This document shows, one piece after another, positions 6,177 through 51,351 of a DNA stretch of 64,000 nt; within the stretch, counting starts at the first letter, position 1, and each line of letters starts with the position of its first letter. Made by a program: the position numbers and the translations under genes. The notes beneath the pieces are model-generated. The model did no database searches. It saw nothing but the letters and a program-made list of their open reading frames with translations, and was not told the origin of the DNA. The DNA lies in the IMG/VR virus record IMGVR_UViG_3300027963_000035, positions 1 to 64,000 of that record, one strand, 5' to 3'.

Positions 6177-6629
6177 ATGGGAATATTAGATAACAACAGC
6201 CAGCAACCGTCAGAGATGGTTGCGAATAGAATTAAAAATCAAACTCGTCAAACATATGTTATGATGGTAAATGCTTTTAACGAAGGAGCTAGGATATTTT
6301 GGCGAAATCCACGAGGATTACTACCAATAGAGATAACTACAGCTTTAGGCAAAGATGCAAAAGAAGTTTTTGAACTTCATGGTAAATTAGGTCAATTATT
6401 ATGGTCTATAAAACCAGAAGATATATCTGAAGGTTTGTCTTTAGTTGGAAGTTTTTCTTATAATGAAGATGGAACTGTAACTGTAGAACCACCTGCTACT
6501 GAACCACCTGCTACTGAACCACCTGCTACTGAACCACCTGCTACTGAACCACCTGCTACTGAACCACCTGCTACTGAACCACCTGCTACTGAACCACCTG
6601 CTACTGAACCACCTGAGCTTGGTCAATAA
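6177..6629 (+). CDS. Hypothetical protein with a C-terminal (EPPAT)n tail
   Basis: 150 aa ORF coupled to its neighbours. Confidence 0.7.
   Translation: MGILDNNSQQPSEMVANRIKNQTRQTYVMMVNAFNEGARIFWRNPRGLLPIEITTALGKDAKEVFELHGKLGQLLWSIKPEDISEGLSLVGSFSYNEDGTVTVEPPATEPPATEPPATEPPATEPPATEPPATEPPATEPPATEPPELGQ
6486..6615 (+). repeat. 15-bp coding tandem repeat gaaccacctgctact x8 plus a partial copy (EPPAT)
   Basis: Identical copies read directly from the sequence. Confidence 0.95.
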
Positions 6630-13969: not shown

Positions 13970-16521
13970 CTATACAAGGTATAACTTATACCTGGAAAAT
14001 AGGCAGATCTGTTGGCCCCTCCCAATAAAGAGGTGAGATCAGAATAGCTGCCGCCTGTATCATTGACAGTGTTTCTTGAGGTGCCTCTAATAAATTGAAT
14101 TGCAGTTAATTGATTTATATTTCTGTTGGTTGTGGCGTGGGATGCTATCATGCCACATACTTGTGGACTAGCCATGCTTGTTCCGCTTAATTTTGACACA
14201 TAGTATGTAATTGGTTTTCCGATACTTCTAATATCAGGAATACTTGGATATCCGGGAAAAATACTGTGTGTCGTTGAAGCTATCATATCCCCAGGTGAAT
14301 AAACATCTACTCTGGGTCCTGTATTGCTCCAAGTATTTTTTGTTTCTGCTACCAATCTACTTAAAGATCCTACGCTAATTACATTTGGGCAAGCCGTTGG
14401 ACTTGATCCTCTGTGATAATACGTCTCATACATGAATTCAGTAAAATATATTGGGTCCACTCCTTCTGGTAGATACCAACCAAATCCTGGGACTACCACA
14501 TTTAGTTTATTGTCATAATCCGGTCCTCCTGGCACATCTATTTTGGTAGAATTATTGCCCGCCGCCCCTACAACAACTACTCCAGAATTCATCAGGTCTG
14601 TTAAATCTGCTTCCATAGTAATAGTTCTTATTCCTATGTCTATGAATCTTTTACCTTGCATCAATGGATCCGAGTAAGCATAAGATATTAATCCAAAATT
14701 ATTTAATTGTTCTTTTGAAAACCCTCCTCCATTTGTAAATACCACATTTGGTGGTGAGGTATATCCGGAACCTTGATGTGTTATATTTATTCCTATGATT
14801 TTTCCTTGATTTACCCCGGTGCCCAGCACCGCTCTTGCCTCTGCCTTATTTCCGGTTTTAACTCCATCCACCACAGAATTTCCGCCATAAAAGCTAACAA
14901 TTGGATCGGAGGTGTAGCCTTCTCCACACAACCAGGTGTATTTTATACTTTCAACAACATATCTTTCATATATTGTTCCATTTATATTATCTTGAACTAT
15001 CTTATAAGTTGGTTCTCCGTGATAGTCTATAAAAATATCGCCGTTTTTAATTGTACTCAAATCACCATCTGTGTGATTATCCTCAAATGCAAGTATGCTT
15101 ATTTGAGCTGGGGTGGAAGGATTTCCTCCGCTTAATATAACTTCTGGAAAATTTAAATACCCTGATCCTCCATTATTAACAATGGGTTCATTCAAAACCC
15201 CAGACTTTATTTTACATGTTGCCCGTGCTGTTCTTCCTCCATTTGGAGGAGGAGGGAAAGTTATAGTAGGAGGCGTAGTATATCCACTTCCCCTGTTTTG
15301 CATCTCTATATAATAAATTCCAGACCCCTCAACCATCCTAATCGATCCTCTACCTCTTGCCGTTTGGCCTCCCGCAGGAGCAGGGCTGAATGTTATCGGA
15401 ACCCACTCAACCCACGAAGTTGGATATCGCTCGCAGGCAGCGCAAGGATACCCCTCCCCAGGATCGGTTATTGTTATTTCATATATTGTTCCATTTCCAA
15501 CTGGTGCTTTTGCTCTGGCTTGTCCTCCCCCGTAAAATGACACTGTCGGTTCATTTGTATAATTTTTTCCCTGATTTGTAATGGCTCCAGAAACAACCTT
15601 GCCAGAATCAACAGTTGTTGTTGCTGTGGCCCCAGAATAATTTCTTGTAGAAGTATATTTTACGCCTCTGTATGTTACGTCTATAATATTTCTGACATCA
15701 ATTCCACCAATGCCAACCCCGTAGCTATGATTTGTTATAGTGGGATTTTTTGTTCCTTTTTTAATATTTACTGGTTTATTTTCGTGCCAGACTTTAATAG
15801 CATGTAAATATAGATCATGCGGACCATCTGACCTCCAATCTCGGCCGTCGACCATCTCTGCGTGATATGGTGATATGTTATATATATTTGCTTTTGGTGC
15901 CCAACCCTGAGTATTTCCGGCTATTGTTCCTCCTACATGAGCACCGTGATTGTTATCTTCTGTTTCTAGATAATTGTCTGGATTTACATATGGTTCATAA
16001 TTGTATTTTTCATATGGCCGGAAATTATCCGGAACCCCATATGGATATAAAACATTGAACCAATCTATTTGGTTTACTCTGCTTCCGCCTGTTCCATCTT
16101 TTCTTAATGCAAACTCTGGATTATTTGGGTCTATGTGTCCATCTACTACAACAACATCTACATCTTCTCCTGTTGGTATTCTGTAGATTGCTGCTACTGC
16201 ATCTGACGGCGCAGCTTGCATTCTTATATTTTTTTCTTCACCATAATCACGACCAGGATCTAGAATCAGGGGTTTTATTTTATAAGGGATTTTCTGTTGA
16301 ATTGCTTCCACTCTTGGATCTTTTTCAAGTTTTTCTGCTTCTTCTTCTGTTAATCTAAAAGATAAAACTCTTCTTTGTAAATTTGTGTTATTTAAAGCTA
16401 AACATTTTTTTTCCGGAATATATTCATCTCCCGAGTCTTTTTTCATGTCATCTAAGAATGAAGTCTTATCTTTTATGTCTTTTAATACTAAATTATATAT
16501 TTTTTCTTTCATGTTATTCAC
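13966..16521 (-). CDS. Subtilisin-like (S8) serine protease with inserted virion-protein-type repeats
   Basis: Catalytic motifs DVVVVDG, HGAHVGG, AAGN and GTSMASP. About 350 aa of G-x-GYT-x-x-P-x-V-x-F-x-GG repeats are inserted between the His and Asn motifs. Confidence 0.9.
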   Translation of the reverse strand: MNNMKEKIYNLVLKDIKDKTSFLDDMKKDSGDEYIPEKKCLALNNTNLQRRVLSFRLTEEEAEKLEKDPRVEAIQQKIPYKIKPLILDPGRDYGEEKNIRMQAAPSDAVAAIYRIPTGEDVDVVVVDGHIDPNNPEFALRKDGTGGSRVNQIDWFNVLYPYGVPDNFRPYEKYNYEPYVNPDNYLETEDNNHGAHVGGTIAGNTQGWAPKANIYNISPYHAEMVDGRDWRSDGPHDLYLHAIKVWHENKPVNIKKGTKNPTITNHSYGVGIGGIDVRNIIDVTYRGVKYTSTRNYSGATATTTVDSGKVVSGAITNQGKNYTNEPTVSFYGGGQARAKAPVGNGTIYEITITDPGEGYPCAACERYPTSWVEWVPITFSPAPAGGQTARGRGSIRMVEGSGIYYIEMQNRGSGYTTPPTITFPPPPNGGRTARATCKIKSGVLNEPIVNNGGSGYLNFPEVILSGGNPSTPAQISILAFEDNHTDGDLSTIKNGDIFIDYHGEPTYKIVQDNINGTIYERYVVESIKYTWLCGEGYTSDPIVSFYGGNSVVDGVKTGNKAEARAVLGTGVNQGKIIGINITHQGSGYTSPPNVVFTNGGGFSKEQLNNFGLISYAYSDPLMQGKRFIDIGIRTITMEADLTDLMNSGVVVVGAAGNNSTKIDVPGGPDYDNKLNVVVPGFGWYLPEGVDPIYFTEFMYETYYHRGSSPTACPNVISVGSLSRLVAETKNTWSNTGPRVDVYSPGDMIASTTHSIFPGYPSIPDIRSIGKPITYYVSKLSGTSMASPQVCGMIASHATTNRNINQLTAIQFIRGTSRNTVNDTGGSYSDLTSLLGGANRSAYFPGISYTLYS

Positions 16522-17734
16522 CCCATCCTGAAATATTATTTTGATTTATCATTCTTAATAATCCCCAATTAATATAATTTTGATCAATATCTCTAGATCT
16601 ATTATAATTTGATATTGAACTAACCTGCATGTTGTCGAAAATACAATTGGCGCCCAAAGCCCTTATGCCTATACCACCATATCCTGGGATGCTTGTATTA
16701 ACGGCAGAAACTATTTGTGTATTATTAAAATACAGTGTTAAAGAACTTCCCAATGTTTTAAAAGCTAGTACGCCTACGGTGTTTGTAGAATTTATTGGTG
16801 ATGAACTTAGTAATGACCATGATCCATTGTTGGACCATATTTGACCGTAATATGTAGTTCCATTTTTTGCAATCATTCCCAAATACATATACCCATCACC
16901 AAATACTCCATATGGATCGGCTGTATATCTAGTTATAATTCCTCCTCCTGAACCCACAGGCATATATGATCTTGCTGCTCCCGTAGGTATCGATGAATTT
17001 ATTAAATCCACATAACAACTAATAAAAGAATCTTTTTCTCTTATTCCATTAAGTGTCATTAAAGAGATGGATGGATCCACGCCCACTGCAGAATTATTAG
17101 ATATTATAAAATTTCCTATGCGTTCACGCCAATAACCTGATATGTAAGGGTTATTTTGTCTGTTGAAATCATCATAGAATGGCAAGGATGCTTCCACTAT
17201 TGCTGGAGGAGCTATTGTTAGAGTAGGAGTGCTGGTTAATGTGGGCGTGCTTGTTTTGGTAGGAGTTAATGTTGGGGTTGATGTTGGGGTGGGAGTGGAA
17301 GTTCTGGTTGGTGTTAAAGTGGGGGTGGAAGTTTTAGTTGGAGTTAATGTTTTAGTATTGGTTGGTGTAGGAGTATTTGTTAAAGTAGGAGTAGGCGTTT
17401 TAGTTGGAGTTAAAGTTGGAGTACTTGTTTTTGTCACTGTGGGAGTGGGAGTGACTTGCATTAAGGTCATACCTCCTATCCAACTGGATGAGCATGCTGG
17501 TATTACTGTCCATCCTACCCCGTTCCAGAAACAATGATAATTGTCTACGCAACTGGTGTAGTTTGATCTGTTTTGTGTTCCTGGTGCGGTTTGAGATGCC
17601 GATGATACTTTGTAGTTTCTCGCTGATTCAATTTTTGCTATGTAATCTAAATTTCTCTGATCCCAGGATAAAGAATTGGGTGCACCGTATCTCGCTCTTA
17701 AATTAAAAGGATCACTAAAAACAATGTTCGCCAT
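16514..17734 (-). CDS. Virion/adhesin protein: Pro-Thr linker plus C-terminal concanavalin-like lectin domain
   Basis: A long (TPT)n linker followed by FYDDFNR...GGIGIRA...IFDN, a LamG/ConA-type sandwich. Confidence 0.65.
   Translation of the reverse strand: MANIVFSDPFNLRARYGAPNSLSWDQRNLDYIAKIESARNYKVSSASQTAPGTQNRSNYTSCVDNYHCFWNGVGWTVIPACSSSWIGGMTLMQVTPTPTVTKTSTPTLTPTKTPTPTLTNTPTPTNTKTLTPTKTSTPTLTPTRTSTPTPTSTPTLTPTKTSTPTLTSTPTLTIAPPAIVEASLPFYDDFNRQNNPYISGYWRERIGNFIISNNSAVGVDPSISLMTLNGIREKDSFISCYVDLINSSIPTGAARSYMPVGSGGGIITRYTADPYGVFGDGYMYLGMIAKNGTTYYGQIWSNNGSWSLLSSSPINSTNTVGVLAFKTLGSSLTLYFNNTQIVSAVNTSIPGYGGIGIRALGANCIFDNMQVSSISNYNRSRDIDQNYINWGLLRMINQNNISGWGE
17218..17455 (-). repeat. Imperfect coding Pro/Thr low-complexity repeat (TPTLTPTKTS...)
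   Basis: Seen in the translation. Confidence 0.85.
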
Positions 17735-19182: not shown

Positions 19183-19887
19183 TTATTTTCCTTTAAATAA
19201 TCTGGGCATATCCACTTCATCATTAATGTTTGTTGGTTCTGTTGTGGTTGGTTCTGTTGTGGTTGGTTCTGTTGTGGTTGGTTCTGTTGTGGTTGGTTCT
19301 GTTGTGGTTGGTTCTGTTGTGGTTGGTTCTGTTGTGGTTGGTGTGTATTCTACACTCGCATTCTCATATAGTTCCACGTCCTTAAAATAGTATTTTCTTA
19401 AATTGTCTATTTGCTTCTGCGTGAGATTCGGCTTCTCGCCGTCCTCGCTTTCGTTTTCCTGCTCGGGCGGCGTCATCCCAAGCGCCTCCGAAAGTGCGTT
19501 TATTCCCTCTGGGAACTTGAAGCACTTTATGTCCTTTTGGTGTTTTATCCTGTTGCTCTGCGGTTCGATGTGAACGTTCATTATGCATTCGCCCCTGAAA
19601 AGGTCTTCTATCACCTCGTCCACGGTCCTTCCAAAATTTGCCCTTGAAAATCCGCTCCTGAACCTTTCCACCGGGTCCCTTATGAGGGCATAGGCGTCCC
19701 CGTCAGGAAAGCTGCTGGACGGGCAGATGAATTGTGGCTTGGGATCCGTTTTGTTAGGATGTTTTTTCTCGAGCCTTGGGAGGAGCTCAGGGTAGAACTG
19801 TTTGATTATTGCCCTTGCGAAACTTGTGCTTCCCGACCTAGGGATGAAGGCGAGGTATTTGTTGCTTGGTGTCTTGAAGTAGTTCAT
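19183..19887 (-). CDS. Sulfotransferase (Sulfotransfer_2-like) with a C-terminal (PTTTE)n tail
   Basis: FIPRSGSTSF, LIRDPVERFRSG and HIEPQ. The start at 19887 overlaps the upstream stop (TAATG). Confidence 0.85.
   Translation of the reverse strand: MNYFKTPSNKYLAFIPRSGSTSFARAIIKQFYPELLPRLEKKHPNKTDPKPQFICPSSSFPDGDAYALIRDPVERFRSGFSRANFGRTVDEVIEDLFRGECIMNVHIEPQSNRIKHQKDIKCFKFPEGINALSEALGMTPPEQENESEDGEKPNLTQKQIDNLRKYYFKDVELYENASVEYTPTTTEPTTTEPTTTEPTTTEPTTTEPTTTEPTTTEPTNINDEVDMPRLFKGK
19235..19339 (-). repeat. 15-bp coding tandem repeat x7 (PTTTE)
   Basis: ggttctgttgtggtt x7 on the + strand. Confidence 0.95.
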
Positions 19888-22800
19888 TAGCAGTCGCTCC
19901 CCGTTTCTATATACCATCCAGGACCACCTTGTCCCTGTTCCCAGGAGAAGTGGTTGTTTATCATATAGTTGATTGCATCTTGTACGTCGCATCCGTAGGT
20001 TACCGCTTGGATATAATTCTTACTCCCACCGGCAGTGCTGTCACCCAGAGACTCAAAGAATTTTATCCATGCGGTAGTGTCCATGTTGTTTTCAGGATTA
20101 TCCCCGTAGTAGTTTATTATTCTGAATTTTGCCTTTCCATTGTATCCCGCCCATGTTCCGAAGCCATAGGCCAAAACCGACTCTAGGGACGGGGTCCCGC
20201 CATTGTTTGAAATGTCTATGTAGCTCAGGTTTCTCAGTCCGCTTACGTTCACGCTCGTTATGTTTGGCCCCGATATACCCAGGGTTTCGAGTGACTTCAG
20301 GCTAAGTACATCTAGTACATCTAGCTCTGTGTTTTGAATGTCTAGTTCAGCTATTCTGTTCATTCCTCTGAGGCTTCCAACTTCCGTGATGAAGTTCAGG
20401 GCTTGGTAGGTAACGAACGATGTTATTCGTTCCCAAGTAGGATTCCCATCCATACTACATGGTTGAATGGTTATGTTTCGAAAACCCGTCATTTCAAATT
20501 GATTTATTATGTAGCTCAAATCTACATAAGGTGTGGACTCTATGGTTGATATGTCTCCATTAATTTTTACATATGAGCATCCACCCACTATGAACGTCTT
20601 GTACCCCGTATGGTCTGCGTTCACCGTGAGGCTCAGTATGTCGGGGTAGCAGTCCCCGGTGGTGTTGCATATTATCCTTCCCTCGACCCTCGTCCCGCTC
20701 TCTCCGACTCCGTGGTTCAAGCCAAGAAGATCTCCCCATGTTGTGGCAGTCACGTTGTACTGGGTCATTCCGCTTTCGCCGTTGAGCGTCAGGTCGTTAA
20801 GGACGAGGAAGTCTCCAAGGGTTGAATTCCCGTAGAGGGCGCAGCCACCAACGTAGAAGTCCGACCTCAGGTTGGGCGGATCATATCCGTCGATCGGACG
20901 ATACTGGCCTTCGCTCCACCCCTCCCAATCAGGTGATCCGTAAGTGTTATACAGCCAGTCTGAATTAAGCCCCGGGCTGTAGCTCATGTTGCCGTGGGAG
21001 TTGTCGTAGAAATACACATCGCCAGGGCATGCTACGCTTCCCAGCGTTGAATTGTCGTGGCAATATATTTTGCCTTCTATGAGTGGAGGCTTGAATGTAT
21101 TTGTTAGGATCACGTCGTCGTATAGGTGGACGTCACCCAGGAAAGTGCCCGCACCGCCAACAATGCCCGTGCCGTATATTTTTGTTTTTCCGTTTATGGT
21201 TCCAAAATAATAAGTTCCATTGTTTCCATCATAAGCGTAGTTTGCTGCGGAGGTTAAAATGGCGTCCCCGTTTATGGTTCCGCCATTTTGACCTCCATCC
21301 ATATATATATCGCCCGTTACTGTGCCAATATTCCATGAACTATAGAATTCGGCATTTCCTCCGATATTTCCCGAGTTGTTTCCATATTGGAACGCTGCAT
21401 TCCCTGTGACGTTCATTGTAGAGTTGAAATTACTGAAGATTGCGTTACCGTTGACGGTTCCTCCGCCGCTTTGCTCGTAAAAAATTGCGTTTCCGTTTAT
21501 TGTTGGTGACCCGCCGCTGACTGACCCCGCAAAGCCACATATTAAGCTGCCATTTACGGTCATCGATCCTACGAGCCTGTATTTTGTAATTAAGTTACCG
21601 TGAACTAAAGAGTTAAATGGCAAATTTCCGTAGTCTGATGCATCTGTGACGTATGTGTTGCCATACAATGTGCAATTAGAAAATCCTGAGTATTCTATTC
21701 CGGAAGAACCGCCGCAGTAAGAGATTATTCCGTTTGTGGCGTGTATGGTGGAGTTGCTGAACAACGTACTTAATCCTGAATCCCCGTTAGACGTCAGTAT
21801 AAGCTTCCTTACTGTAATGTTGACTCCGCTGATTGAGGCATTTTGTGCATAGACTATATCTTTTTCCCCGGGTAGCGATGTGCTCTGCACAGTATGCTCC
21901 TCATCAACCCACCAGTTATTAAGGTTGGTCCAACTGTTGTCGTTGGCGATGTTGTTGAAGTAGAGCGTCCTTGAATCCAAGGATGGGTGGTCTTCAACAA
22001 TCACGGAAAGTGCTTCTGTTGGTGGGAGGAATTCGCCACTGTATACGGCTCTTCCCTTTATGACTCTGAACTCCTTGAGGTATCCGTACAAATAAAAGGC
22101 CCCCATTCCGTCCTCTTCCCAGGCTCCTATCCTCAGCATGTTGGATCTTCCAAGGTCCGCTGAGACCCCGGTGAGCTGGAAGACCCTTTCTCCGTTAACG
22201 AATATGTTGAATTCCCCGCCCTTCCTTGTCATTGCGATGTGAGCTTCCTGGTCGATGGGAATGTTTTCATCCGGATACCAGTTGTATGTTTCTCCGTTTA
22301 TCACCAGGCTTTCTGCTCCATAAGTCCTGAGCTTTATTTTCCCGCCCAGGTTGAATATTGTTCCTATGGTGCCCCAGCCGTCGTATGGGATGTAGATTTT
22401 CGACTCTATTGTGAAGTCTCCCCTTCCGAATCCGAAGTCCTTTTCGTCCTTAGTCTCAAGGTAGCTTCCATTCCCGTCGAAGAAGCACTTAGATTCCTTG
22501 ATCCTTGTATTTCCCTTGACTTTTATATGCTTGTTTTCAATGGAGCAATCGGTGAATATTGTGCTGTTTTCCCTGCCGTCCATGTGCAGGAGCAATGAGA
22601 CCTTTTCCGTCTTGCTCAGTCCTAGTATGTTTCCGCCGCCTAGTCCCTTTGCTTTGCCTGAGCAGGTGGTTTCTGATGAGTTTATGTAAACCACATCAGA
22701 GTCTATTAAACTTATTGATGCCGAATTTACTGCGCCGGCCTTGCAGTCCGTTAGCACGGTCGATCCGCCACTTATTTCTCCGATTTCAACGGTTTTATTG

Positions 22801-26202: not shown

Positions 26203-26209
26203 AAAATAA

Positions 26210-28143: not shown

Positions 28144-30558
28144 ATGTTGAACATCCAGAACACAATGTCTAGGCTAAATTCTGATCACGCAGAAATAACT
28201 GCAATGGCACCGGATCTGAATTATTTCACAGATGAAGTTGAAAACTACATAAGTTGTCAATGTAATACTAGTAGAGTGAACGGCATTGCCCAACATGATG
28301 ATGGTGATATGCTTTTGGTCGGAGAAGGGTTTGTAGATGGCACGCCAGACAATAACTGGGAATGTTGCTACTCAGAGGTGGTAAAAATAAGCCAAAACGG
28401 TATCCAAGATGAAACATTTCCCGCTACAAGATTTAGTGATTCTGTCTATACTGTTGCCGTCCAACCTAATGGAAAAATATTATTAGGTGGTTGGTTCTAC
28501 AATCATTCTGTAGACGGATCTATTACAACACAAACTTCACACTATATTGCCAAATTTGATTCAAATGGTGTCTTTGACGCCAGTTTTGATTCTACATTAA
28601 ATGGCGCAATAGATGGAGTTGTGAATAAAATTCTAGCCTTAAGTGACAATACTTCGGTAGTGGCGGGCCGGTTCACTTCTAGAATTATGATCCTAAATGA
28701 TGATGGAACTCAAGTCCCGATAGAAGCAAACTCTAACTTTGACGCAGTATATGATGTTGCAATAGACTCTGAGGAAAGATTAATTGCAGTAGGATATAAT
28801 TTAGAAAGAAAACATATTATCAGATATGTATATGATAGTGGAACTTCAACATGGATTGAAGATGATACATTTATTCCTCCTGTTTTCAATAACGATAGTT
28901 TCTTGAAAACAGTTGCGGTTCAAGATGATAATAAGATAATAGTGGGCGGAAATTTTAGTGTAATCTCAGATACTGGAATAACCACAACACTATATAGCAT
29001 ATGTAGAATAAATGAAAATGGCTATATAGATACATCTTTTGGTTTAGACGCACAAGGAGCACAAAATCCTGGAATTGCTTACTACATCCCAGCTGGATAT
29101 TATGGCGAGGAAAATTTCTATCCTCCCTATATAACAAAGATTGAACTTTTAGATGATGGAAAAATGATTGTTGGTGGTAATTTCAATGCTTTCGGATATC
29201 CCGGAGACACACCATCAGTTAGAAATAACATCTGTAAAATTAATTCAGATGGATCACTGGACAGTTCTTTTGGCGGAGCAAATGATTTCTATGGAAATAA
29301 TCGATCTAGTAATCAAATAGATAATAATTCATACTACCCATCAGTAAATGATATATATCAAGTATCTTCTGGCGATATATGGGTTGGTGGATATTTTATT
29401 AAACCAAAAAGATACTATGTTAAATTAAATTCATCGGGAACGCCAGGTTCCTTTGGATCCGATTATATGCCATTAGTAACTGGTATTGATGATGGCGGAT
29501 TTGATATGTATGATGGCGGTAATTTCTTTAATACCAATCTAACTCAAATCTATGATGATATTAAAGAAGATGAAGTAGATTATGATCTTTCCATTCCTTC
29601 CACTCACACCCAGATGCCCAATGAAGTTTCTTTTGGTCCTCAATGGGCAGCAGGAGGTGCTTCAAAGAATATTTATTCACCAATATATTTCGACAGCACA
29701 ATAGAAGACGGAACAGATTATTTCGGAGAAGGAAGTCAATATTTCACTTCCATGTATCCTGGTATGTTTGTTTTAGTGGCCACAAATATAGATATAACTC
29801 AGTTTAGTATAACTGGAGATATCGGCGCAGACGGAGGAACTAGTTATTCAGTGGATGTTTTGTCAATAACATCTAGATCGAATGATTACACCGTATTTGC
29901 TAAGACCGTAGAAGCAGCACAAGAGGAAGAGGAAGTGGCGCCCACTCATTTAATAATTGTTCCGGGTAATAGTGATGGAATAACTCATCTTTATGACGAA
30001 TCTACAAATTATGACGATCACGCAGTCGATGGAATAACCGGTATAAAAGAAATATATGTAATAGTAATGTCTAAGCTTGATGGAAGTTTTATGACAACAT
30101 CTGAGATGGGAGATATAGCACAAAAATTCTTAGATACCATAACCGAAGAAGCCACCGTCACTACTACCACTACTACTGAGCCTTTTATTGTTGAAGCGGA
30201 AGAACCTAAATCTTGTGGTAGTACTATTTGCAACATTAATATAAGATGTTTGAAACATAATAAAGATTTAAAAATAGGATCCACTTTGAATTCTTGTGGA
30301 TGTTCTACTTGGAAATTTATTGATCCAGGTACTAAGTTAAAAGGAGGAGTACTAAGCGGATCATCAAAGAAGGGAGCATGGATTCCTGCATCAACAGTCT
30401 GTTCGCAGATGCTTTATTCGTATCCTTCAAAGGTTGTTTCTGCTGCACCGGTGACAACCACCACGACGGCCCCAACCACAACAGTGGCTCCCACAACCAC
30501 AACAGTGGCTCCCACAACCACAACAGTGGCTCCCACAACCACAACAGTGGCTCCCTGA
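28144..30558 (+). CDS. Beta-propeller (delta-60/DUF5122-like repeat) protein with Cys-rich and Thr-rich C-terminus
   Basis: Repeats VAVQPNGKILLGG, AVQDDNKIIVGGNF and DGKMIVGGNF...DGSLDSSF; TTTTVAP tail. Confidence 0.8.
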   Translation: MLNIQNTMSRLNSDHAEITAMAPDLNYFTDEVENYISCQCNTSRVNGIAQHDDGDMLLVGEGFVDGTPDNNWECCYSEVVKISQNGIQDETFPATRFSDSVYTVAVQPNGKILLGGWFYNHSVDGSITTQTSHYIAKFDSNGVFDASFDSTLNGAIDGVVNKILALSDNTSVVAGRFTSRIMILNDDGTQVPIEANSNFDAVYDVAIDSEERLIAVGYNLERKHIIRYVYDSGTSTWIEDDTFIPPVFNNDSFLKTVAVQDDNKIIVGGNFSVISDTGITTTLYSICRINENGYIDTSFGLDAQGAQNPGIAYYIPAGYYGEENFYPPYITKIELLDDGKMIVGGNFNAFGYPGDTPSVRNNICKINSDGSLDSSFGGANDFYGNNRSSNQIDNNSYYPSVNDIYQVSSGDIWVGGYFIKPKRYYVKLNSSGTPGSFGSDYMPLVTGIDDGGFDMYDGGNFFNTNLTQIYDDIKEDEVDYDLSIPSTHTQMPNEVSFGPQWAAGGASKNIYSPIYFDSTIEDGTDYFGEGSQYFTSMYPGMFVLVATNIDITQFSITGDIGADGGTSYSVDVLSITSRSNDYTVFAKTVEAAQEEEEVAPTHLIIVPGNSDGITHLYDESTNYDDHAVDGITGIKEIYVIVMSKLDGSFMTTSEMGDIAQKFLDTITEEATVTTTTTTEPFIVEAEEPKSCGSTICNINIRCLKHNKDLKIGSTLNSCGCSTWKFIDPGTKLKGGVLSGSSKKGAWIPASTVCSQMLYSYPSKVVSAAPVTTTTTAPTTTVAPTTTTVAPTTTTVAPTTTTVAP
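30469..30555 (+). repeat. 21-bp coding tandem repeat (PTTTTVA) x~4
   Basis: cccacaaccacaacagtggct: three exact copies and one degenerate copy. Confidence 0.9.
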
Positions 30559-30619
30559 TCAATTATTTTATAAACAATACTATATAATTTATACCAACAA
30601 ACATAAAGGAATAACAAAC

Positions 30620-31057: not shown

Positions 31058-31349
31058 AAAATTCCTAGAATGGTTAGAAGAAAAAGACCCAGAAGTCTAT
31101 AATGAAATACTAGGAACACTTGCTCTTGCTGGTGGTGCTGGCATGTTAATTGCCCCCAAGGCCACTAAATATGTAGCCAAAAAGGTTTTTGATGTTGGTG
31201 CCAATGTCACAGGCCACGCTCTTAAAAAAGGAATAGATCTCACAGCAGATGCCATAAAAGGTGGCACTAAACTTGCTGGTAAAGGGATTTATCATGGATC
31301 AAAAATGGCTGCAAAAGGCATAAAAAATGCCATTAGCAAAAAAGAATAA
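31050..31349 (+). CDS. CTS-like protein (MRKKFLEWLEE) with a Gly/Ala-rich hydrophobic segment
   Basis: GTG start at 31050 overlaps the upstream stop; same frame as track ORF 30972..31349. Confidence 0.6.
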   Translation: MRKKFLEWLEEKDPEVYNEILGTLALAGGAGMLIAPKATKYVAKKVFDVGANVTGHALKKGIDLTADAIKGGTKLAGKGIYHGSKMAAKGIKNAISKKE

Positions 31350-46909: not shown

Positions 46910-47335
46910 ATGATTAATGCTTTGGTTGAAAGAATAAATCAAGACCTTAAAAATGAGTGGAAACATCATTGCTTTTATCTTCATAATGCAAGTAATATAG
47001 TTGGATTGCACGCAAAGGAATACAAAGAGTGGCTGTTGGAACAAGCTGCCAGTGAAATGCAACACATCGTCCAATTCTCTGATCTTATTACTGGGCTTGG
47101 GGGCTCTCCTGTAAAGGTGCCGAACGATTTTCCATCCTTGAGCGATCCAAGAGAAATTCTCGAATACGCAGCAAAAATGGAAGAAGAGGTTATAAATAAC
47201 TATTATCAGAGAATAGCTGATGCTGAAAAAATAAACGATCTTAATAGTTATTGGGTAGTTATATTTTTGGAAAAACAGATGGAAGATAGCAGGAAAGATT
47301 TGGATGAGATAAGACAGATGCTAAAAGGAATATAA
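46910..47335 (+). CDS. Ferritin/bacterioferritin-like diiron protein
   Basis: NEWKH, ASEMQH, KMEEEV and EDSRKDLDE: four-helix-bundle ExxH pattern. Confidence 0.8.
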   Translation: MINALVERINQDLKNEWKHHCFYLHNASNIVGLHAKEYKEWLLEQAASEMQHIVQFSDLITGLGGSPVKVPNDFPSLSDPREILEYAAKMEEEVINNYYQRIADAEKINDLNSYWVVIFLEKQMEDSRKDLDEIRQMLKGI

Positions 47336-47625
47336 TGGTTTTTTCTTTAGATTTTGACAACACTTTCACAGAAGATCCAATATTTTGGAAGTGGTTTATT
47401 CTTAAGGCAACCTCTAGAGGCCACCGAGTTTTTTGTGTAACTGCCCGGACAGAAGAACAAAAAAATATAGATGAAGTACAGGGTAGCTTTGGGTCTTCTT
47501 TGGAATTAATAGAAGATGTGATATTCTGCAATCATCTTCCTAAAAAAGATGTTGTCGATAAACTTGGTGTGAATATTGATGTCTGGATAGACGACAAGCC
47601 AGAAACAATTATATTCGGTTTATAA
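47335..47625 (+). CDS. Minimal HAD-superfamily phosphatase
   Basis: LDFDNT (DxD), VTAR and WIDDKP. Confidence 0.75.
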   Translation: MVFSLDFDNTFTEDPIFWKWFILKATSRGHRVFCVTARTEEQKNIDEVQGSFGSSLELIEDVIFCNHLPKKDVVDKLGVNIDVWIDDKPETIIFGL

Positions 47626-48412
47626 TTCTCTTTGCAATCTTGGACACATACTCTAAAGAAGGGGTGTGGTCCATTTTAGATAAAAGATTTATTGGATTAT
47701 CGGATGCCATGGAGAAATTCATATCATTACTTTTATATAGTTTTTTATTAAACATGGGATTAACTCCATGCCTATAGCTTATTATATCTTTTAATTGACT
47801 CTCTATTAGATTTCCTTCGATATCATTACTGGCTAATATTTTACTGACTTTATGTTTGCACAAAGTCGCAAATAATGCCACTTTATCAACTTGATATTTG
47901 TTTGGATCCAATCCCACCATTTGACATAATATTGCCATATCCTTAAAGAAATTTAATGATAATTCATTAAAAACAAACACTTCACCCAGATTAAGCCATT
48001 TATCCATTTCATTTTTTGATAGTCTAATTAATTTGGCATATCTTTTATTATAAACAAAGTCAGGATCAATAGAAAATATAAATTGTTTATCTTGTATTTT
48101 TATATCTTTTTGTATGACTGTATCGGGATCTAGTACGGTCACGGGTAAACTTAGTATGTTGTTCTCCATAAGAGTGTAAAGAGAACCCCATTTATTTAAT
48201 TTGAGTATACCTGTTTCTCTGCCTATATTTTTATGAATATATTTATTGGCATGTGTTGAAAGATTTTTATTATTTTTAAGATACTCTTTGTCTGCCTGAG
48301 CCACCGATATATATAGATTGTCCTCTAGACCCAATACCTTGAAGCTTTCTATCAATAATTCTAGTTGCCAATTATGGTAGTAAGAATCTTCTACCGAGAC
48401 AAAATAATTCAT
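47609..48412 (-). CDS. GT-A glycosyltransferase resembling plant GT95/GT96 (Hyp-arabinosyl/Ser-galactosyl transferases)
   Basis: FVSVEDSYYHNWQLELLIESF, LNKWG and VLDPD parallel the recalled SGT1/HPAT motifs FSVEC-x-x-YFDWQ...HSF, NKP and ILDAD. Confidence 0.6.
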   Translation of the reverse strand: MNYFVSVEDSYYHNWQLELLIESFKVLGLEDNLYISVAQADKEYLKNNKNLSTHANKYIHKNIGRETGILKLNKWGSLYTLMENNILSLPVTVLDPDTVIQKDIKIQDKQFIFSIDPDFVYNKRYAKLIRLSKNEMDKWLNLGEVFVFNELSLNFFKDMAILCQMVGLDPNKYQVDKVALFATLCKHKVSKILASNDIEGNLIESQLKDIISYRHGVNPMFNKKLYKSNDMNFSMASDNPINLLSKMDHTPSLEYVSKIAKRIINRI

Positions 48413-48843
48413 ATTATTTCTTGATCTGTTCCTCTGCTACAATATCTTTTTTTACTGCACATGGTTGATTCATCTACGTTACTCATTCCATCTGTGCTTA
48501 ATAGAAAGTATCTCTGATATAGTCTATAGACTTCGCTATATGCAACTCCCCATGATGCATCGTGGGAAAAATCATCGAATTTGTCTTGACTATCCAAGTT
48601 ATCTAGTAGATGATTCCAAGCACGGGCATGTGCCCATTCATGTAAAAGAGTGTCTATAGCAGAATCTTCTGGCAGATCTCTGTTAATTCTTATAAAGAAT
48701 TTCTTTTTATATTTTACACAATCTCCATCAAGACATCTTCCCATTGCCACTCTTCTAACGCTGATTTCATACGCTAAAGGGCAATGCTTTTTAAGAATTT
48801 TAACTACATCTTTGTAATCTGTAAATTTATTTTTCATTTTCAT
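48409..48843 (-). CDS. Small HExxH zinc metallopeptidase (SprT/ImmA-like)
   Basis: DTLLHEWAH and a distal H (FSHDASWG). Confidence 0.7.
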   Translation of the reverse strand: MKMKNKFTDYKDVVKILKKHCPLAYEISVRRVAMGRCLDGDCVKYKKKFFIRINRDLPEDSAIDTLLHEWAHARAWNHLLDNLDSQDKFDDFSHDASWGVAYSEVYRLYQRYFLLSTDGMSNVDESTMCSKKRYCSRGTDQEII

Positions 48844-48939
48844 GATCTCCCTATTATATCTTAATCGAGCCTGGAATAAAACACTATTGTATTTAGATTT
48901 ATTGGGATTAACTTTAATGTTTAAATATAATTAAATAAT

Positions 48940-48984
48940 TTTTTTGTCGTAAGTGCTTTTAAAATAAGGACTTACGACAAAAAA
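48940..48984. repeat. Perfect 15-bp inverted repeat in a divergent intergenic region
   Basis: ttttttgtcgtaagt (15-nt spacer) acttacgacaaaaaa. Confidence 0.9.
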
Positions 48985-49349: not shown

Positions 49350-49825
49350 AAATGCCAAAAAAGATTTGTGATAAATGCAAAAAAGAAAATGGTGTAAGAG
49401 CCAGAAGATGTAAATTTTGTGATGCCGGCTTTGCATTTAAAATAAAAAAAGATAAGCCCAAGGCAACTAGAATAGACTGGAAGGAGCTCCAAAGCGGAGA
49501 CATTATAAAAGTTTTGGGTGGTGGTCCAATATGGAAAACATCCGACAGCCCTTCTTCTAAAACAGAGGTGGAGGAATATGATGATGAAGACGATGATGAC
49601 AACGAAGATGAAGATGGTTCTTCGAACTTAAAAAATAAAACACGTGACAAAATTTTAATGGGTTATCGTGGAAAGTTCAAAGTTTTTAGATTAGATCAAA
49701 ACGGAATAGTCGCCTATGGAATAGAAAAGAATTCTGGCTATTGTCATATTTGGATGGCTGAAGAAAAATTAATTGATGGTAAATTATTAAAGAGGCCTCA
49801 CAGGATAACCAAAGTTGCATGGTAA
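49346..49825 (+). CDS. Zinc-ribbon hypothetical protein with an acidic insert
   Basis: CDKC...CKFC; EEYDDEDDDDNEDED. Confidence 0.6.
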   Translation: MKMPKKICDKCKKENGVRARRCKFCDAGFAFKIKKDKPKATRIDWKELQSGDIIKVLGGGPIWKTSDSPSSKTEVEEYDDEDDDDNEDEDGSSNLKNKTRDKILMGYRGKFKVFRLDQNGIVAYGIEKNSGYCHIWMAEEKLIDGKLLKRPHRITKVAW

Positions 49826-50571
49826 ATCATGCTTATATTAAGGGGTTTAGCACTTTACCTGATTTAAAGAAGATAAACCCAGAACAGGTCTTTGAAAAAG
49901 ACAGAAAAGATTCTGAATTTATACAAAAAGAAAAAAGAATTGCTCTATCTCAGCAAGAATTCTTTTTTGAAAACCACATATCTGAAGATATATATGAGTC
50001 CTGCGAAAGGTTCATACTGGATAATTACCCCATAAGTCTACAGAGTGGAAAATATATCGATATAGCCAGAGAAATAGATGAAGATCTAATAATTCATAGG
50101 ATAAAAAATAATAAAGATTGGATGGCTAGTGGACATGTCTGCTTCCCCAGTAGTTGGAATCCGGCTGAAAAAATAGGCATGTCTTTTGATGAGTTGCATT
50201 CTCCAGTTCCAATGAGTTTAAAAAATAGCACTAAAATAGTTAATGCAATAATAAACTCTGGGATATTTGAAAGATATCTTTGGAGTGTGGTTCATGAGAG
50301 GAAATATAACTATCATCCAAGGTTTCCATTCATAAATTTTGACAAGAATGACCCTAAGGTTTTTATAAAAATAGAAAGACAAGTCACCGTAGGATTCCCA
50401 GATAAGGGTTTTTGTCTTTTTATTTTAAGACAGTACCTGATTGATGAAGAGGATATAGACAAAGAAAGCTTGATTAAAACAATAAATAATATGACAGAAG
50501 AGCAAAAAAAATATAAAGGTCTGTCAGATTCTAAAGATTTAATTGACTATCTTGGGCAAAATATTTCTTAA
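49819..50571 (+). CDS. DUF3445 / haem-dependent oxidative N-demethylase alpha-subunit-like protein
   Basis: EDLII...GHVCFPSSWNPAEKIGMSFDELHSPVP, ERYLWS and IERQ. Confidence 0.75.
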   Translation: MVNHAYIKGFSTLPDLKKINPEQVFEKDRKDSEFIQKEKRIALSQQEFFFENHISEDIYESCERFILDNYPISLQSGKYIDIAREIDEDLIIHRIKNNKDWMASGHVCFPSSWNPAEKIGMSFDELHSPVPMSLKNSTKIVNAIINSGIFERYLWSVVHERKYNYHPRFPFINFDKNDPKVFIKIERQVTVGFPDKGFCLFILRQYLIDEEDIDKESLIKTINNMTEEQKKYKGLSDSKDLIDYLGQNIS

Positions 50572-51351
50572 AGATTTTTTGTCATGTATCGTGTATTCTT
50601 TTCTTCCATACTGTACACCATTTTTGCACTGATTAAAATATACTGAATCAAAGAATAGTTTATCTGGTTCTACTAAATAAATTTCTATATCATTATTATT
50701 TAAATGTTGATTTATATCTCTTATCATTATCTCATACAAACTAATATCGAGTGCTCTAAAGGCCATTTCTAATGGCTTTAAAATTCCCTTTGCGCCTTCC
50801 CAATAAGAAAGAGTTAAAGGTCTACCCATTATCACATATATTTCGTTATATCCTAAATCTATGCATTGTTTTAATGGCGCTAATTGGCGACTGCCGGCAT
50901 CAACCCAGCCGTTTCTATCTTCTACTAGTCCTGTAATTGCAACGCTTGAAAGCACATTTTCCTTAAACTCATCTGCTGTTATTCCTTTATTGGAAACATA
51001 CATCATCTCTCCAGAATGAATATTTAACTTAGAAACTATACTTTCACATACTGGGGTGTTCTTTAATGCGTTGGAAACTATTTTTTCCATTGGTTTTTGA
51101 TTTAACATCCCTGTTTTTCTCCAGGGAAAGTAATTAATCCCAAAAACATCAAATATGTTTTTTATATTAGACCACATATCTGCAACACCTTGTGGCCCCA
51201 AATAAGCATAACTAGCTGCGCATATACTCCCAGAACTGATCCCTATTGTTAATTCTGGTTTTATATTACTCTCATATAGAGATAAAGCTATTCCCGCTTG
51301 TATACTTCCTCTAGCTCCTTCTCCCGTAAAACAAAAAGCAGTTCTTTTCAA
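50539..51351 (-). CDS. Patatin-like phospholipase
   Basis: GEGARG (oxyanion), GISSG (GxSxG) and VDAG (catalytic Asp). Confidence 0.88.
   Translation of the reverse strand: MKRTAFCFTGEGARGSIQAGIALSLYESNIKPELTIGISSGSICAASYAYLGPQGVADMWSNIKNIFDVFGINYFPWRKTGMLNQKPMEKIVSNALKNTPVCESIVSKLNIHSGEMMYVSNKGITADEFKENVLSSVAITGLVEDRNGWVDAGSRQLAPLKQCIDLGYNEIYVIMGRPLTLSYWEGAKGILKPLEMAFRALDISLYEIMIRDINQHLNNNDIEIYLVEPDKLFFDSVYFNQCKNGVQYGRKEYTIHDKKSLRNILPKIVN

What the first reader, a model, noticed from the sequence alone, without database searches (positions are those of the whole stretch)
47609..48412. Plant-type protein O-glycosyltransferase (GT95/GT96-like) in a phage
Seen in sequence: FVSVEDSYYHNWQLELLIESF ... 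LNKWG ... VLDPDT. Established (recalled motifs): plant Ser-O-galactosyltransferase SGT1 and Hyp-O-arabinosyltransferases carry FSVEC..YFDWQ..HSF / NKP / LDAD or EPD, and they modify Ser/Pro-rich extensin-like proteins. Inference: this may be the initiating enzyme that O-glycosylates the phage's own Pro/Thr-rich virion linkers.
Basis: partly seen in the sequence, partly recalled or inferred. Interest (0 to 1): 0.62.

Follow-up and report, generated by a model that had tools for sequence, protein, structure and literature searches.

The report
Fast-evolving glycosyltransferase family in jumbo phages
This gene of a giant T4-like phage encodes a soluble sugar-transferring enzyme from an undescribed, phage-specific family that most resembles plant protein O-glycosyltransferases in shape, but comparison with related phages does not support the idea that its conserved job is to glycosylate the phage's Pro/Thr-rich proteins.

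Summary
The ORF (47609-48412, minus strand, 267 aa) and the quoted motifs are real. The AlphaFold2 model is confident (pLDDT 88.5) and has a GT-A fold. Its best solved matches are retaining enzymes: Skp1 alpha-galactosyltransferase AgtA (GT77, Z 14.6), glycogenin and LgtC (GT8), and GT6. D95-P-D97 follows strand 4, where DxD motifs sit. Among predicted structures, the nearest non-viral clusters carry Pfam PF23452 (HPAT, TM 0.77-0.78). By sequence the protein does not reach that model; only 3 of 81 relatives hit it weakly. The protein belongs to an unannotated family (283 representative clusters) found mainly in very large T4-like phages. It evolves much faster than the capsid protein (27-34% against 82-86% identity). 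A SprT-like zinc peptidase gene usually sits immediately upstream. The substrate idea is weakly supported. This phage has many Pro/Thr-rich repeat proteins and a prolyl-hydroxylase-type gene, but four of the five GT-carrying genomes rated at least 85% complete have neither. No DNA-hypermodification precursor genes were found. Most likely this is a cytoplasmic, metal- and UDP-sugar-dependent retaining glycosyltransferase acting on a protein acceptor that remains unidentified.

The parts
47609..48412 (-). Gene for a 267-aa soluble GT-A-fold glycosyltransferase (P0001), member of an unannotated phage family
   Evidence: ORF and translation; AF2 model pLDDT 88.5, pTM 0.88; GT-A matches at Z 14.6-12, Foldseek E 1e-7, Atlas TM 0.77-0.84; family of 283 clusters; no TM segment
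48338..48406 (-). Codons 3-25, the N-terminal strand 1 / helix 1 block YFVSVEDSYYHNWQLELLIESFK, presumed nucleotide-binding region
   Evidence: W15, Q16 and S23 are invariant; Y3, L19, L20 and F24 are >=90% conserved in 81 sequences. Strand 2-8 and helix 12-26 in the model. The nucleotide-binding role is inferred from GT-A enzymes in general.
48122..48130 (-). Codons 95-97, D-P-D, a DxD-type metal/nucleotide-sugar site directly after strand 4 (residues 91-94)
   Evidence: Position in the model. Family columns: pos 95 H46/E11/D10, pos 96 P50/S16/A10, pos 97 D65/H8 of 81.
47744..47782 (-). Codons 211-223, ISYRHGVNPMFNK, the conserved C-terminal motif (family consensus [H]-Y-x-x-G-x-P-P-x-F-x-K), possible C-terminal His metal ligand
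   Evidence: Y213 80/81, G216 81/81, P219 70/81, F221 78/81, K223 78/81; His at 212 in 54/81 (Ser here) and at 215 in 39/81 (His here). The likeness to the GT8 HxxGxxKPW motif is from recall, not tested.
48409..48843 (-). Upstream gene, overlapping the GT start by 4 nt: a 144-aa SprT-like zinc metallopeptidase (HEWAH at residues 68-72)
   Evidence: Pfam SprT-like E 0.0032, below cut-off. A homolog lies immediately upstream on the same strand in 30 of 65 loci. H68, E69, H72, W76 and H94 are invariant in 19 sequences.
47335..47625 (+). Convergent 96-aa HAD-like gene (DFDNT motif), overlapping the GT's 3' end by 17 nt; a short counterpart of the HAD_SAK_1 gene found beside the GT in relatives
   Evidence: PHROG 4919/4256, E 1e-21. 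Recovered with the HAD queries of relatives. HAD_SAK_1 lies within 1.5 kb of the GT in 22 of 65 loci.
16514..17734 (-). Candidate acceptor only (inferred, weak): 406-aa protein with a TPTPT-type linker
   Evidence: PT fraction 0.77 over 30 aa; only a PHROG of unknown function
19183..19992 (-). Candidate acceptor only (inferred, weak): 269-aa protein with (TTTEP)n repeats
   Evidence: PT fraction 0.83; no family hit
28144..30558 (+). Candidate acceptor only (inferred, weak): 804-aa beta-propeller protein with a C-terminal (TTTTVAP)n tail
   Evidence: DUF5122 repeats; PT fraction 0.77
6177..6629 (+). Candidate acceptor only (inferred, weak): 150-aa protein with (EPPAT)n repeats, directly downstream of a sulfotransferase gene
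   Evidence: sub-threshold Extensin_1 hit and the neighbouring sulfotransferase

Best explanation
The gene encodes a soluble, cytoplasmic glycosyltransferase with the GT-A fold. It belongs to the retaining-type group that includes GT8, GT77, GT6 and the HPAT-like enzymes. Shown: the fold, the conserved N-terminal block, a DxD-type site (D95-P-D97) right after strand 4, a conserved C-terminal Y-x-x-G-x-x-P-x-F-x-K motif, the absence of a membrane anchor, and membership of a large phage-specific family without annotation. Inferred mechanism: a divalent metal held by D95/D97, and perhaps H215, binds the diphosphate of a UDP-sugar. The sugar probably comes from the host pool, because the two sugar-nucleotide families searched (NTP_transferase, Epimerase) were not found in the 251 kb held. 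It is then transferred, with retention of anomeric configuration, to a hydroxyl group of an acceptor. I judge the acceptor most likely to be a protein or peptide. The nearest structural relatives mostly work on proteins or on protein-bound glycans (Skp1 AgtA, glycogenin, HPAT clusters, PqqD-HPAT fusions, GlyE, PBCV-1 A64R). The gene is also tightly paired with a SprT-like zinc peptidase that published comparative work predicts to act on host proteins. The enzyme evolves much faster than the structural core, which fits a role at the phage-host interface. The acceptor that is conserved across the family is therefore probably not the Pro/Thr-rich repeat proteins, although in this particular phage they remain possible extra or alternative acceptors.
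For: Fold: AF2 pLDDT 88.5, pTM 0.88. VIA-align Z 14.6 to AgtA 6mw8, 14.3 to glycogenin, 13.1 to LgtC, 12.9 to PBCV-1 A64R, with retaining GT-A enzymes filling nearly all of the top 14 rows. Foldseek PDB E 1e-7 to GT6 enzymes. Atlas TM 0.77-0.78 to PF23452 HPAT clusters, including a PqqD-HPAT fusion. Atlas features score 0.95 to viral clusters labelled GT77, GT8 and HPAT. Motifs and conservation. Soluble, family median pI 6.1. SprT-like gene immediately upstream in 30 of 65 loci, with an invariant HExxH. In the window's phage the SprT-GT pair lies about 49 kb from the slot it occupies beside PolyA_pol in relatives. GT 27-34% identical where MCP is 82-86% and SprT 53-61% identical in many of the same loci. 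The literature predicts SprT-like and ClpP peptidases of group 2.2 jumbo phages to target host proteins (PMC7824862). NTP_transferase and Epimerase families not found in the genome.
Against: No acceptor was identified by any test. Many of the best structural matches (LgtC, WbbM, AgtA, A64R, LARGE1) transfer to sugars, not to amino acids, so a glycan acceptor is equally compatible with the fold. About half of the loci lack the SprT-like gene, so the GT works without it. The complex prediction for GT plus SprT gave no answer. The first Asp of the DxD and the C-terminal His are not strictly conserved in the family. Fast evolution could also reflect relaxed constraint. The genome record is rated only about 50% complete, so absences of pathway genes are provisional.
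Confidence: 0.4

Rival explanations
1. One reading: this is the initiating enzyme that O-glycosylates Thr or hydroxyproline in the phage's own Pro/Thr-rich linkers, as plant HPAT/SGT1 do on extensins.
For: HPAT-labelled clusters are the nearest non-viral structural neighbours. The phage has about nine PT-rich repeat proteins. A prolyl-4-hydroxylase-type oxygenase (PF13640, E 4e-8, above cut-off) lies directly beside two of them. Three GT2 genes could extend a glycan. Virion glycosylation by phage GTs is known in mycobacteriophages (cited in PMC11256854).
Against: (PT)3-coding repeats are clearly above control in 4 of 42 GT-carrying records. Of the five records rated at least 85% complete, four (390, 436, 527 and 373 kb) have none and the fifth (533 kb) is at noise level. 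The TTT..PTTT type was clearly above control in 3 of the 20 larger records tested. The P4H-type gene is in 6 of 42 records and is missing from four of those five. The GT is not near any PT-rich gene in the window; the nearest is about 17 kb away. The window's PT-rich proteins match no known virion family. The GT's conserved neighbours are not structural genes.
Confidence: 0.15
2. It modifies a host envelope glycan (LPS/LOS core, O-antigen or capsule), as bacterial GT8 enzymes such as LgtC and WaaJ do, for example to block superinfection.
For: LgtC Z 13.1, WbbM Z 14.2 and another GT8 protein Z 12.8 are among the top PDB matches. GT8-labelled viral clusters are near in the Atlas feature search. 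Jumbo phages and cyanophages are reported to carry GT clusters proposed to remodel the host surface (PMC7824862; PMC12801897). Peripheral, anchor-less GTs are usual for LPS core synthesis (my own knowledge).
Against: The gene is not in a polysaccharide gene cluster. The two sugar-nucleotide families searched (Epimerase, NTP_transferase) were not found; flippase and polymerase genes were not searched for. The other three GTs are scattered across the genome. No Pfam GT8 hit. HPAT-type clusters are structurally closer than any GT8 structure (TM 0.77 against about 0.5).
Confidence: 0.17
3. It acts within an RNA-repair or small-molecule pathway together with its conserved neighbours, the CCA-adding-type nucleotidyltransferase and the HAD_SAK_1 phosphatase. 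It could glycosylate an RNA or nucleotide, or a phosphorylated metabolite that the HAD enzyme then dephosphorylates, as in glucosyl- or mannosyl-glycerate synthesis.
For: PolyA_pol lies within 3 kb in 55 of 65 loci and is often directly adjacent, in three different arrangements; HAD_SAK_1 lies within 1.5 kb in 22 of 65. In the window's genome a different (GT2) glycosyltransferase fills the slot next to PolyA_pol. Retaining GT-A plus phosphatase is a known two-step design for glycoside solutes (my own knowledge; mannosylglycerate synthase appears at Z 10.3).
Against: PolyA_pol belongs to a conserved backbone block ([168][436][157]<>[91][PolyA_pol], present in about 60 loci), and the GT sits in the variable slot beside it, so adjacency may be positional. 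In the window's phage the SprT-GT pair lies 49 kb from PolyA_pol. The family's median pI of 6.1 is not typical of nucleic-acid binders. I know of no RNA-directed GT of this fold class in phages.
Confidence: 0.1
4. It glycosylates hydroxylated bases in the phage DNA (hypermodification) to evade restriction, as in T4, RB69 and the 5mYOX/TET-linked systems.
For: T4-like phages commonly glycosylate their DNA. Phage GT-A enzymes acting on 5hmC exist, including GT8-like ones that add secondary sugars and resemble PBCV-1 A64R (bioRxiv 10.1101/2023.12.21.572611). A64R is at Z 12.9 here.
Against: No thymidylate-synthase-family gene (dCMP/dUMP hydroxymethylase or 5hoC synthase), no TET/JBP and no C5-methyltransferase was found in the 251 kb held, so there is no precursor base. 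The known RB69/DLP3 arabinosyltransferases are GT-B (PMC13326640). The gene is not in a nucleotide-metabolism cluster. The family pI is acidic to neutral.
Confidence: 0.05

Closest known systems
Plant and algal hydroxyproline O-arabinosyltransferases (HPAT, CAZy GT95; Pfam PF23452), with Ser O-galactosyltransferase SGT1 (GT96)
   Same: Predicted GT-A-like fold. HPAT-labelled clusters are the nearest non-viral structural neighbours (TM 0.77-0.78, about 250-258 aligned residues). PF23452 ties as the Pfam family most often touched by family members (3 of 81). Both presumably act on hydroxyl acceptors.
   Different: No significant sequence match: this protein has no Pfam hit at E<=1 and the best hit among relatives is E 0.0014. 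It is soluble, with no anchor, whereas the plant enzymes are Golgi type II membrane proteins (my own knowledge). It is a 267-aa single domain encoded by a phage. A prolyl hydroxylase partner is present in only 6 of 42 carrier records. No GT95/GT96 structure is solved (PMC8476585), so the comparison rests on predicted models alone.
Skp1 alpha-galactosyltransferase AgtA (GT77, PDB 6mw8), and glycogenin and LgtC (GT8)
   Same: Best solved-structure matches (Z 14.6, 14.3 and 13.1; 208-225 aligned residues). All are retaining, Mn-dependent, UDP-sugar-using GT-A enzymes. AgtA and glycogenin are cytoplasmic and protein-directed. The DxD sits after strand 4, and the C-terminal Y-x-x-G motif recalls the GT8 signature.
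   Different: Only 12-14% sequence identity. No Pfam GT8 or Nucleotid_trans hit. The first DxD position is mostly His in the family.
Mycobacteriophage virion glycosylation (Che8 and relatives; Freeman et al. 2023) and PBCV-1 capsid glycosyltransferase A64R
   Same: Virus-encoded GTs that decorate the virus's own structural proteins. A64R is a GT-A match at Z 12.9.
   Different: No evidence here that virion proteins are the acceptors. The gene lies away from the structural genes' own neighbourhood in relatives, and its presence does not track PT-rich proteins. The Freeman paper itself was not available to read; it is cited through PMC11256854.
Phage DNA glycosyltransferases (T4 alpha/beta-GT, RB69/DLP3 arabinosyltransferases, 5mYOX-linked GT-A enzymes)
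   Same: GTs encoded by T4-like phages. Some 5mYOX-linked enzymes are GT-A, and a few are GT8-like.
   Different: The T4, RB69 and DLP3 enzymes are GT-B. The genes that make the precursor bases are absent here.

Membership tests
GT-A fold nucleotide-sugar glycosyltransferases (superfamily) | Single Rossmann-like alpha/beta/alpha domain with the GT-A strand order | tested here: met
   Confident model. 126 PDB chains at Z>=8, with GT-A enzymes filling the top of the list and covering residues 1-267. 278 Foldseek hits at E<=1e-3.
GT-A fold nucleotide-sugar glycosyltransferases (superfamily) | DxD-type acidic motif at the end of strand 4 | tested here: met
   D95-P-D97 follows strand 91-94. In the family the motif reads [H/E/D]-[P/S/A]-D, with D97 in 65 of 81.
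GT-A fold nucleotide-sugar glycosyltransferases (superfamily) | C-terminal His as second metal ligand (typical of many retaining GT-A enzymes) | tested here: inconclusive
   His at column 212 in 54 of 81 (Ser in this protein) and at 215 in 39 of 81 (His in this protein). No coordinates were available to check the geometry.
GT-A fold nucleotide-sugar glycosyltransferases (superfamily) | Binds and transfers from a nucleotide sugar | not testable with these tools
   Needs a biochemical assay.
   No hit at E<=1 for P0001, and none in the whole genome. 3 of 81 relatives hit weakly, best E 0.0014. 20 further members gave no hit.
   Atlas shape search: TM 0.77-0.78 to four clusters in which 55-100% of members carry PF23452. 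Both sides are predicted models.
   No HPAT sequences could be fetched. 401 genomes of one bacterial phylum held none, and the word-indexed search returned only in-family proteins.
   No hydrophobic anchor (max 19-residue hydropathy 1.2). A P4H-type gene is present in this genome but in only 6 of 42 carrier records. PT/P-rich repeats are found in a minority of carriers.
GT8 (Pfam PF01501) and GT77 (Pfam PF03407) | Sequence match to the family model | tested here: not met
   No hit for this protein or for the 81 relatives at E<=1. Only the Atlas feature search places partly labelled viral clusters nearby.
GT8 (Pfam PF01501) and GT77 (Pfam PF03407) | Structural similarity to solved members | tested here: met
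   Z 14.6 (GT77 AgtA), 14.3 and 14.2 (glycogenin), 13.1 (LgtC), 12.8, 12.6.
Phage DNA base glycosyltransferases | Genome encodes the hydroxylated-pyrimidine precursor pathway (ThyA-family hydroxymethylase or 5hoC synthase, or C5-MT plus TET/5mYOX) | tested here: not met
   PF00303, PF12851 and PF00145 gave no match in the 251 kb held. Caveat: the record is rated about 50% complete.

The most novel reading that the evidence does not exclude
This jumbo phage runs a plant-like extensin-type pathway on its own Pro/Thr-rich proteins. A phage prolyl-4-hydroxylase-type enzyme makes hydroxyproline, the HPAT-like glycosyltransferase starts O-glycans on Hyp or Thr, three GT2 enzymes extend them, and a sulfotransferase encoded next to an (EPPAT)n protein may sulfate them. 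The result would be mucin- or extensin-like glycoprotein decorations. In relatives without such repeats the same enzyme family would serve other acceptors.
Probability: 0.13. Interest if true: 0.8.

Novelty: new variant of a known kind. Interest (0 to 1): 0.5.

Why it matters
Phage-encoded glycosyltransferases are known mainly for DNA glucosylation, seroconversion of the host and, recently, virion glycosylation in mycobacteriophages. This is a sizeable family (283 representative clusters) with no Pfam, PHROG-function or NCBIfam label. It is confined largely to very large T4-like phages, structurally nearest to the plant HPAT type, cytoplasmic, fast-evolving and usually paired with a zinc peptidase. 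If it glycosylates a host or phage protein, it would add protein O-glycosylation to the phage host-takeover or counter-defence repertoire. It would also give a soluble, tractable relative for the structurally unsolved GT95/GT96 enzymes.

Tried and rejected
- Sequence annotation of P0001 gave nothing useful. Pfam had no hit at E<=1. PHROGs gave only a weak partial hit to a family of unknown function. NCBIfam had none. PDB by sequence and by profile had none. tblastn and megablast against 50,697 phage records found no match.
- Attempts to get real HPAT sequences for a profile-profile test failed. PF23452 was absent from the own genome, from three MAGs and from 401 genomes of one phylum. 'Relatives' cannot be drawn for a virus record. 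The word-indexed profile search returned only in-family proteins. Two guesses at which family members touch the HPAT model failed.
- Complex prediction for GT plus SprT-like peptidase returned 'no answer' (score 0.00). It is not evidence either way.
- Promoter timing was uninformative. TATAAATA occurs at about chance frequency genome-wide (49 seen, roughly 55 expected), and sigma-70-like sites are not enriched.
- A GT-negative control set of related phages could not be built. Most of the 80 capsid-matched contigs are short fragments, so only the one-sided test (GT present, PT-linkers absent) was possible.
- The idea that adjacency to the CCA-adding-type gene proves a shared pathway was downgraded once PolyA_pol proved to be part of a conserved backbone block, with the GT in the variable slot beside it.
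- BFVD gave only uncharacterised or GT8/GT6/GT34-like viral GTs.
- The Freeman et al. 2023 paper on virion glycosylation is not held.
Full report
**1. The observation.** The window has an ORF at exactly 47609..48412 on the minus strand (ATG start, 267 aa).
- FVSVEDSYYHNWQLELLIESF at residues 4-24
- LNKWG at residues 72-76
- VLDPDT at residues 93-98

It is a real gene. The word-indexed search found 14 relatives, from 94% down to 26% identity, with E-values from 1e-161 to 1e-16. The exhaustive profile search found 283 representative clusters at E<=1e-3 and 186 at E<=1e-30. All listed hits are single-domain proteins of about 190-360 aa. None carries a name or a Pfam label.

**2. What genome this is.** The window is the first 64 kb of a 251,265-bp virus record with 35.7% GC. 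It encodes a T4-type portal (Pfam Portal_T4, E 3e-75, interrupted by an intein) and a gp23 major capsid protein (E 1e-89). A 323-kb IMG/VR contig carries a 100% identical copy of the GT and a 97% identical capsid gene.

**3. Fold.** AlphaFold2 with the 15-sequence alignment gave a confident model: mean pLDDT 88.5, pTM 0.88, with only residues 227-237 poor.
- VIA-align against 48,161 PDB representatives put GT-A enzymes at the top, over the whole length. The rows were Skp1 alpha-galactosyltransferase AgtA (GT77, Z 14.6, 208 aligned, rmsd 3.9), glycogenin (Z 14.3 and 14.2), WbbM (14.2), BoGT6a (13.3), the UGGT catalytic domain (13.2), LgtC (13.1) and PBCV-1 A64R (12.9). Nearly all of the top 14 rows are, to my knowledge, retaining enzymes.
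- Foldseek against the PDB agreed (GT6 ABO transferases, E 1e-7).
- BFVD showed only uncharacterised phage proteins and GT8/GT6/GT34-like giant-virus GTs.
- D95-P-D97 lies directly after strand 91-94 and before strand 98-100, which is the canonical DxD place.

**4. Family signature (81 diverse members).**
- W15, Q16, S23 and G216 are invariant.
- Y3, L19, L20, F24, L33, N50, Y213, F221, K223 and P240 are at least 90% conserved.
- The 'DxD' reads [H 46 / E 11 / D 10]-[P 50 / S 16 / A 10]-[D 65 / H 8].
- The C-terminal motif reads [H]-Y-x-x-G-x-P-P-x-F-x-K. It recalls the GT8 HxxGxxKPW signature; that likeness is from my own recall and was not tested.
- The protein has no hydrophobic anchor. Its pI is 8.6 and the family median is 6.1.

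**5. Is it GT95/GT96?**
- By sequence, no. P0001 has no Pfam hit at E<=1, and PF23452 finds nothing in the genome. Only 3 of 81 relatives touch PF23452, with a best E of 0.0014, below the cut-off. Even so, it ties as the family most often hit.
- By shape, it is the nearest named family. In the ESM Atlas search the two best rows are viral clusters of hypothetical proteins (TM 0.84). Four of the other eight rows carry PF23452: a bacterial cluster, two Chlorophyta clusters fused to ShK or PAN domains, and a PqqD-HPAT fusion (TM 0.75-0.78, 246-257 aligned residues).
- The Atlas feature search independently places the protein next to viral clusters partly labelled Nucleotid_trans (GT77), GT8 and HPAT, all at score 0.95.
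- GT95 and GT96 have no solved structure (PMC8476585). That explains why the PDB search returns GT8/GT77 instead.
- I could not fetch HPAT sequences for a profile-profile test.

Verdict: the protein works like, and looks most like, the HPAT / GT8 / GT77 group of retaining GT-A enzymes. Membership of GT95/GT96 is not established, and one defining test (the Pfam model) is not met.

**6. Gene neighbourhood.**

In the window:
- The GT start overlaps by 4 nt the end of a 144-aa SprT-like zinc peptidase gene (48409-48843; HEWAH motif).
- A 96-aa HAD-like gene (47335-47625) converges on the GT's 3' end.

Across 65 loci from viral contigs, metagenomes and three MAGs:
- A SprT-like gene lies immediately upstream on the same strand in 30 loci. 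Its HExxH is conserved in all 25 upstream partners examined (20 distinct sequences), and H68, E69, H72, W76 and H94 are invariant in the 19-sequence alignment.
- A HAD_SAK_1 gene lies within 1.5 kb in 22 loci.
- A ClpP gene lies within 1.5 kb downstream in 18 loci.
- A PolyA_pol-family (CCA-adding type) gene lies within 3 kb in 55 loci.

Closer comparison showed that [168 aa][436 aa][157 aa]<>[91 aa][PolyA_pol] is a conserved backbone block of this clade. The GT sits in a variable slot just beyond it. In the window's genome that slot holds a GT2-type transferase (95852-96715), and the SprT-GT pair sits 49 kb away. So the SprT-GT pair stays together as a unit, while the link to PolyA_pol may be positional.

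Published comparative work on jumbo phages predicts two things for the T4-like group 2.2. The CCA-adding enzyme and the 'Swiss-army-knife' HAD phosphatase should act in tRNA repair. ClpP and SprT-like peptidases should target host proteins (PMC7824862). This neighbourhood is therefore a host-conflict region, not a virion module.

**7. Rate of evolution.** On the same contigs, identity to the window's proteins is as follows:

| Capsid protein | GT |
|---|---|
| 86% | 34% |
| 84% | 31% |
| 82% | 27% |
| 82% | 28% |
| 82% | 30% |
| 84% | 29% |

The SprT partner is 53-61% identical in many of the same loci. The GT is the fastest-evolving gene of the set, yet it keeps its catalytic motifs.

Pro/Thr-rich repeats are real and abundant in this phage.
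- In the window: (EPPAT)n at 6177-6629, TPTPT-type at 16514-17734, (TTTEP)n at 19183-19992, (TTTTVAP)n at 28144-30558, and a PT-rich STIG1-like ORF at 30620-31057.
- Elsewhere in the genome there are four more large PT-rich proteins.
- The genome also has a prolyl-4-hydroxylase-type oxygenase (PF13640, above cut-off) directly beside two of them. It has three GT2 genes and a sulfotransferase next to the EPPAT protein.

This local picture is suggestive, but the comparative test goes the other way.

| Feature | GT-carrying records with it | The five records rated at least 85% complete |
|---|---|---|
| (PT)3-coding repeats | 6 of 42 by raw tally, 4 clearly above control | none in the 390-, 436-, 527- and 373-kb records; noise level (2 against 3 control) in the 533-kb record |
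| TTT..PTTT repeats | 3 of the 20 larger records tested, clearly above control | none in the same four; noise level in the 533-kb record |
| P4H-type gene | 6 of 42 | absent from the same four; present in the 533-kb record |

None of the window's PT-rich proteins matches a known virion family, and none lies near the GT. The family's conserved function therefore cannot be the glycosylation of PT-rich linkers. That role remains possible only as a lineage-specific use.

**9. The DNA rival.**
- Known phage DNA arabinosyltransferases are GT-B (PMC13326640).
- GT-A enzymes that glycosylate 5hmC do exist. They are described next to C5-methyltransferase and 5mYOX genes, and database mining also found such GTs beside ThyS (bioRxiv 10.1101/2023.12.21.572611).
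- The 251 kb held contain no thymidylate-synthase-family, TET/JBP or C5-methyltransferase gene.
- The record is rated about 50% complete, so this absence is provisional. With the neutral family pI, it still makes DNA modification unlikely.

**10. Conclusion.**
- Shown: a real, conserved gene; a GT-A fold of the retaining GT8/GT77/HPAT-like kind; a DxD-type site; a soluble protein; a phage-specific unannotated family; a conserved pairing with a SprT-like peptidase; fast evolution.
- Inferred: metal- and UDP-sugar-dependent transfer with retention, to a hydroxyl of a protein acceptor at the phage-host interface (confidence about 0.4).
- The complex prediction for GT plus SprT gave no answer and is not used as evidence.
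- Nothing in the paper library links HPAT-type enzymes with phages.

I rate it a new variant of a known kind, of moderate interest.

Noticed in passing
window 11459-13969 (+): The T4-type portal protein gene (gp20; Pfam Portal_T4, E 3e-75) is interrupted by an intein (Intein_splicing, residues about 115-331, E 1.5e-11).
   Followed up: no
window 5375-6175 (+) and 6177-6629 (+): A sulfotransferase gene (Sulfotransfer_3 E 2e-14, Sulfotransfer_1 E 1.6e-12) lies directly upstream of the (EPPAT)n repeat protein. The repeat protein gives a weak, sub-threshold Extensin_1 hit. This may be a modification enzyme and substrate pair.
   Followed up: partly
window 30620-31057 (+), overlapping an alternative ORF at 30589-31119 (-): The plus-strand ORF combines a STIG1-like Cys-rich domain (PF04885, E 1.9e-8, above cut-off), a domain known from plants, with a TPTPT linker. 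The minus-strand ORF has no hit, so the plus strand is probably the real gene.
   Followed up: partly
genome G000 119100-119735 (-), beside 114690-116078 (+) and 116085-119096 (+); L073: A prolyl-4-hydroxylase-type 2OG-Fe(II) oxygenase (PF13640) lies 4 nt from the end of a 1003-aa PT-rich protein gene and next to a second, 462-aa one. The closely related 323-kb contig G404 shows PT-repeat matches a few hundred bases from its P4H-type gene as well.
   Followed up: partly
genome G000 95852-96715 (+) and 96704-97909 (-); L009: A GT2-family glycosyltransferase converges on, and overlaps, a PolyA_pol/CCA-adding-type gene. It fills the same syntenic slot that the HPAT-like GT occupies in relatives such as L002, L034 and L051. 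This could be non-orthologous replacement or coincidence. Two more GT2 genes lie at 167567-168388 and 184392-185084.
   Followed up: partly
loci L014-L072 and L074-L153: The GT is 27-34% identical where the capsid protein is 82-86% identical on the same contigs. The clade's genomes appear to be about 340-530 kb; five GT-carrying records of 373-533 kb are rated 85-100% complete.
   Followed up: yes
window about 48,930-48,975 (intergenic, between divergent genes): A strong hairpin (stem GTCGTAAGT...ACTTACGAC) flanked by T and A runs, resembling a bidirectional terminator, sits in what should be a divergent promoter region upstream of the SprT-GT operon.
   Followed up: no
window 46910-47335 (+), 49819-50571 (+), 50539-51351 (-), 13966-16521 (-): Auxiliary genes lie around the finding: ferritin-like (E 1e-19), haem-dependent oxidative N-demethylase alpha-subunit-like (E 2e-22), patatin-like phospholipase (E 3.5e-7) and an 851-aa protein with an S8 subtilase domain.
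   Followed up: no
window 19887-23099 (-) and 23395-26274 (-): Two about 1000-aa Laminin_G_3 (concanavalin-like lectin) proteins lie in a stretch of raised GC (0.47 against 0.35). Both hit PHROG 3545 of unknown function. They may be fibre or decoration proteins.
   Followed up: no
L011, L012, L013 (MAG contigs): Family members with the same SprT/HAD/PolyA_pol neighbourhood lie on contigs binned as Neisseriaceae, Bacteriovoracaceae and Chloracidobacterium MAGs. These are probably phage contigs binned with bacteria. If so, the 'bacterial' labels on some Atlas clusters near this family could be misleading.
   Followed up: no
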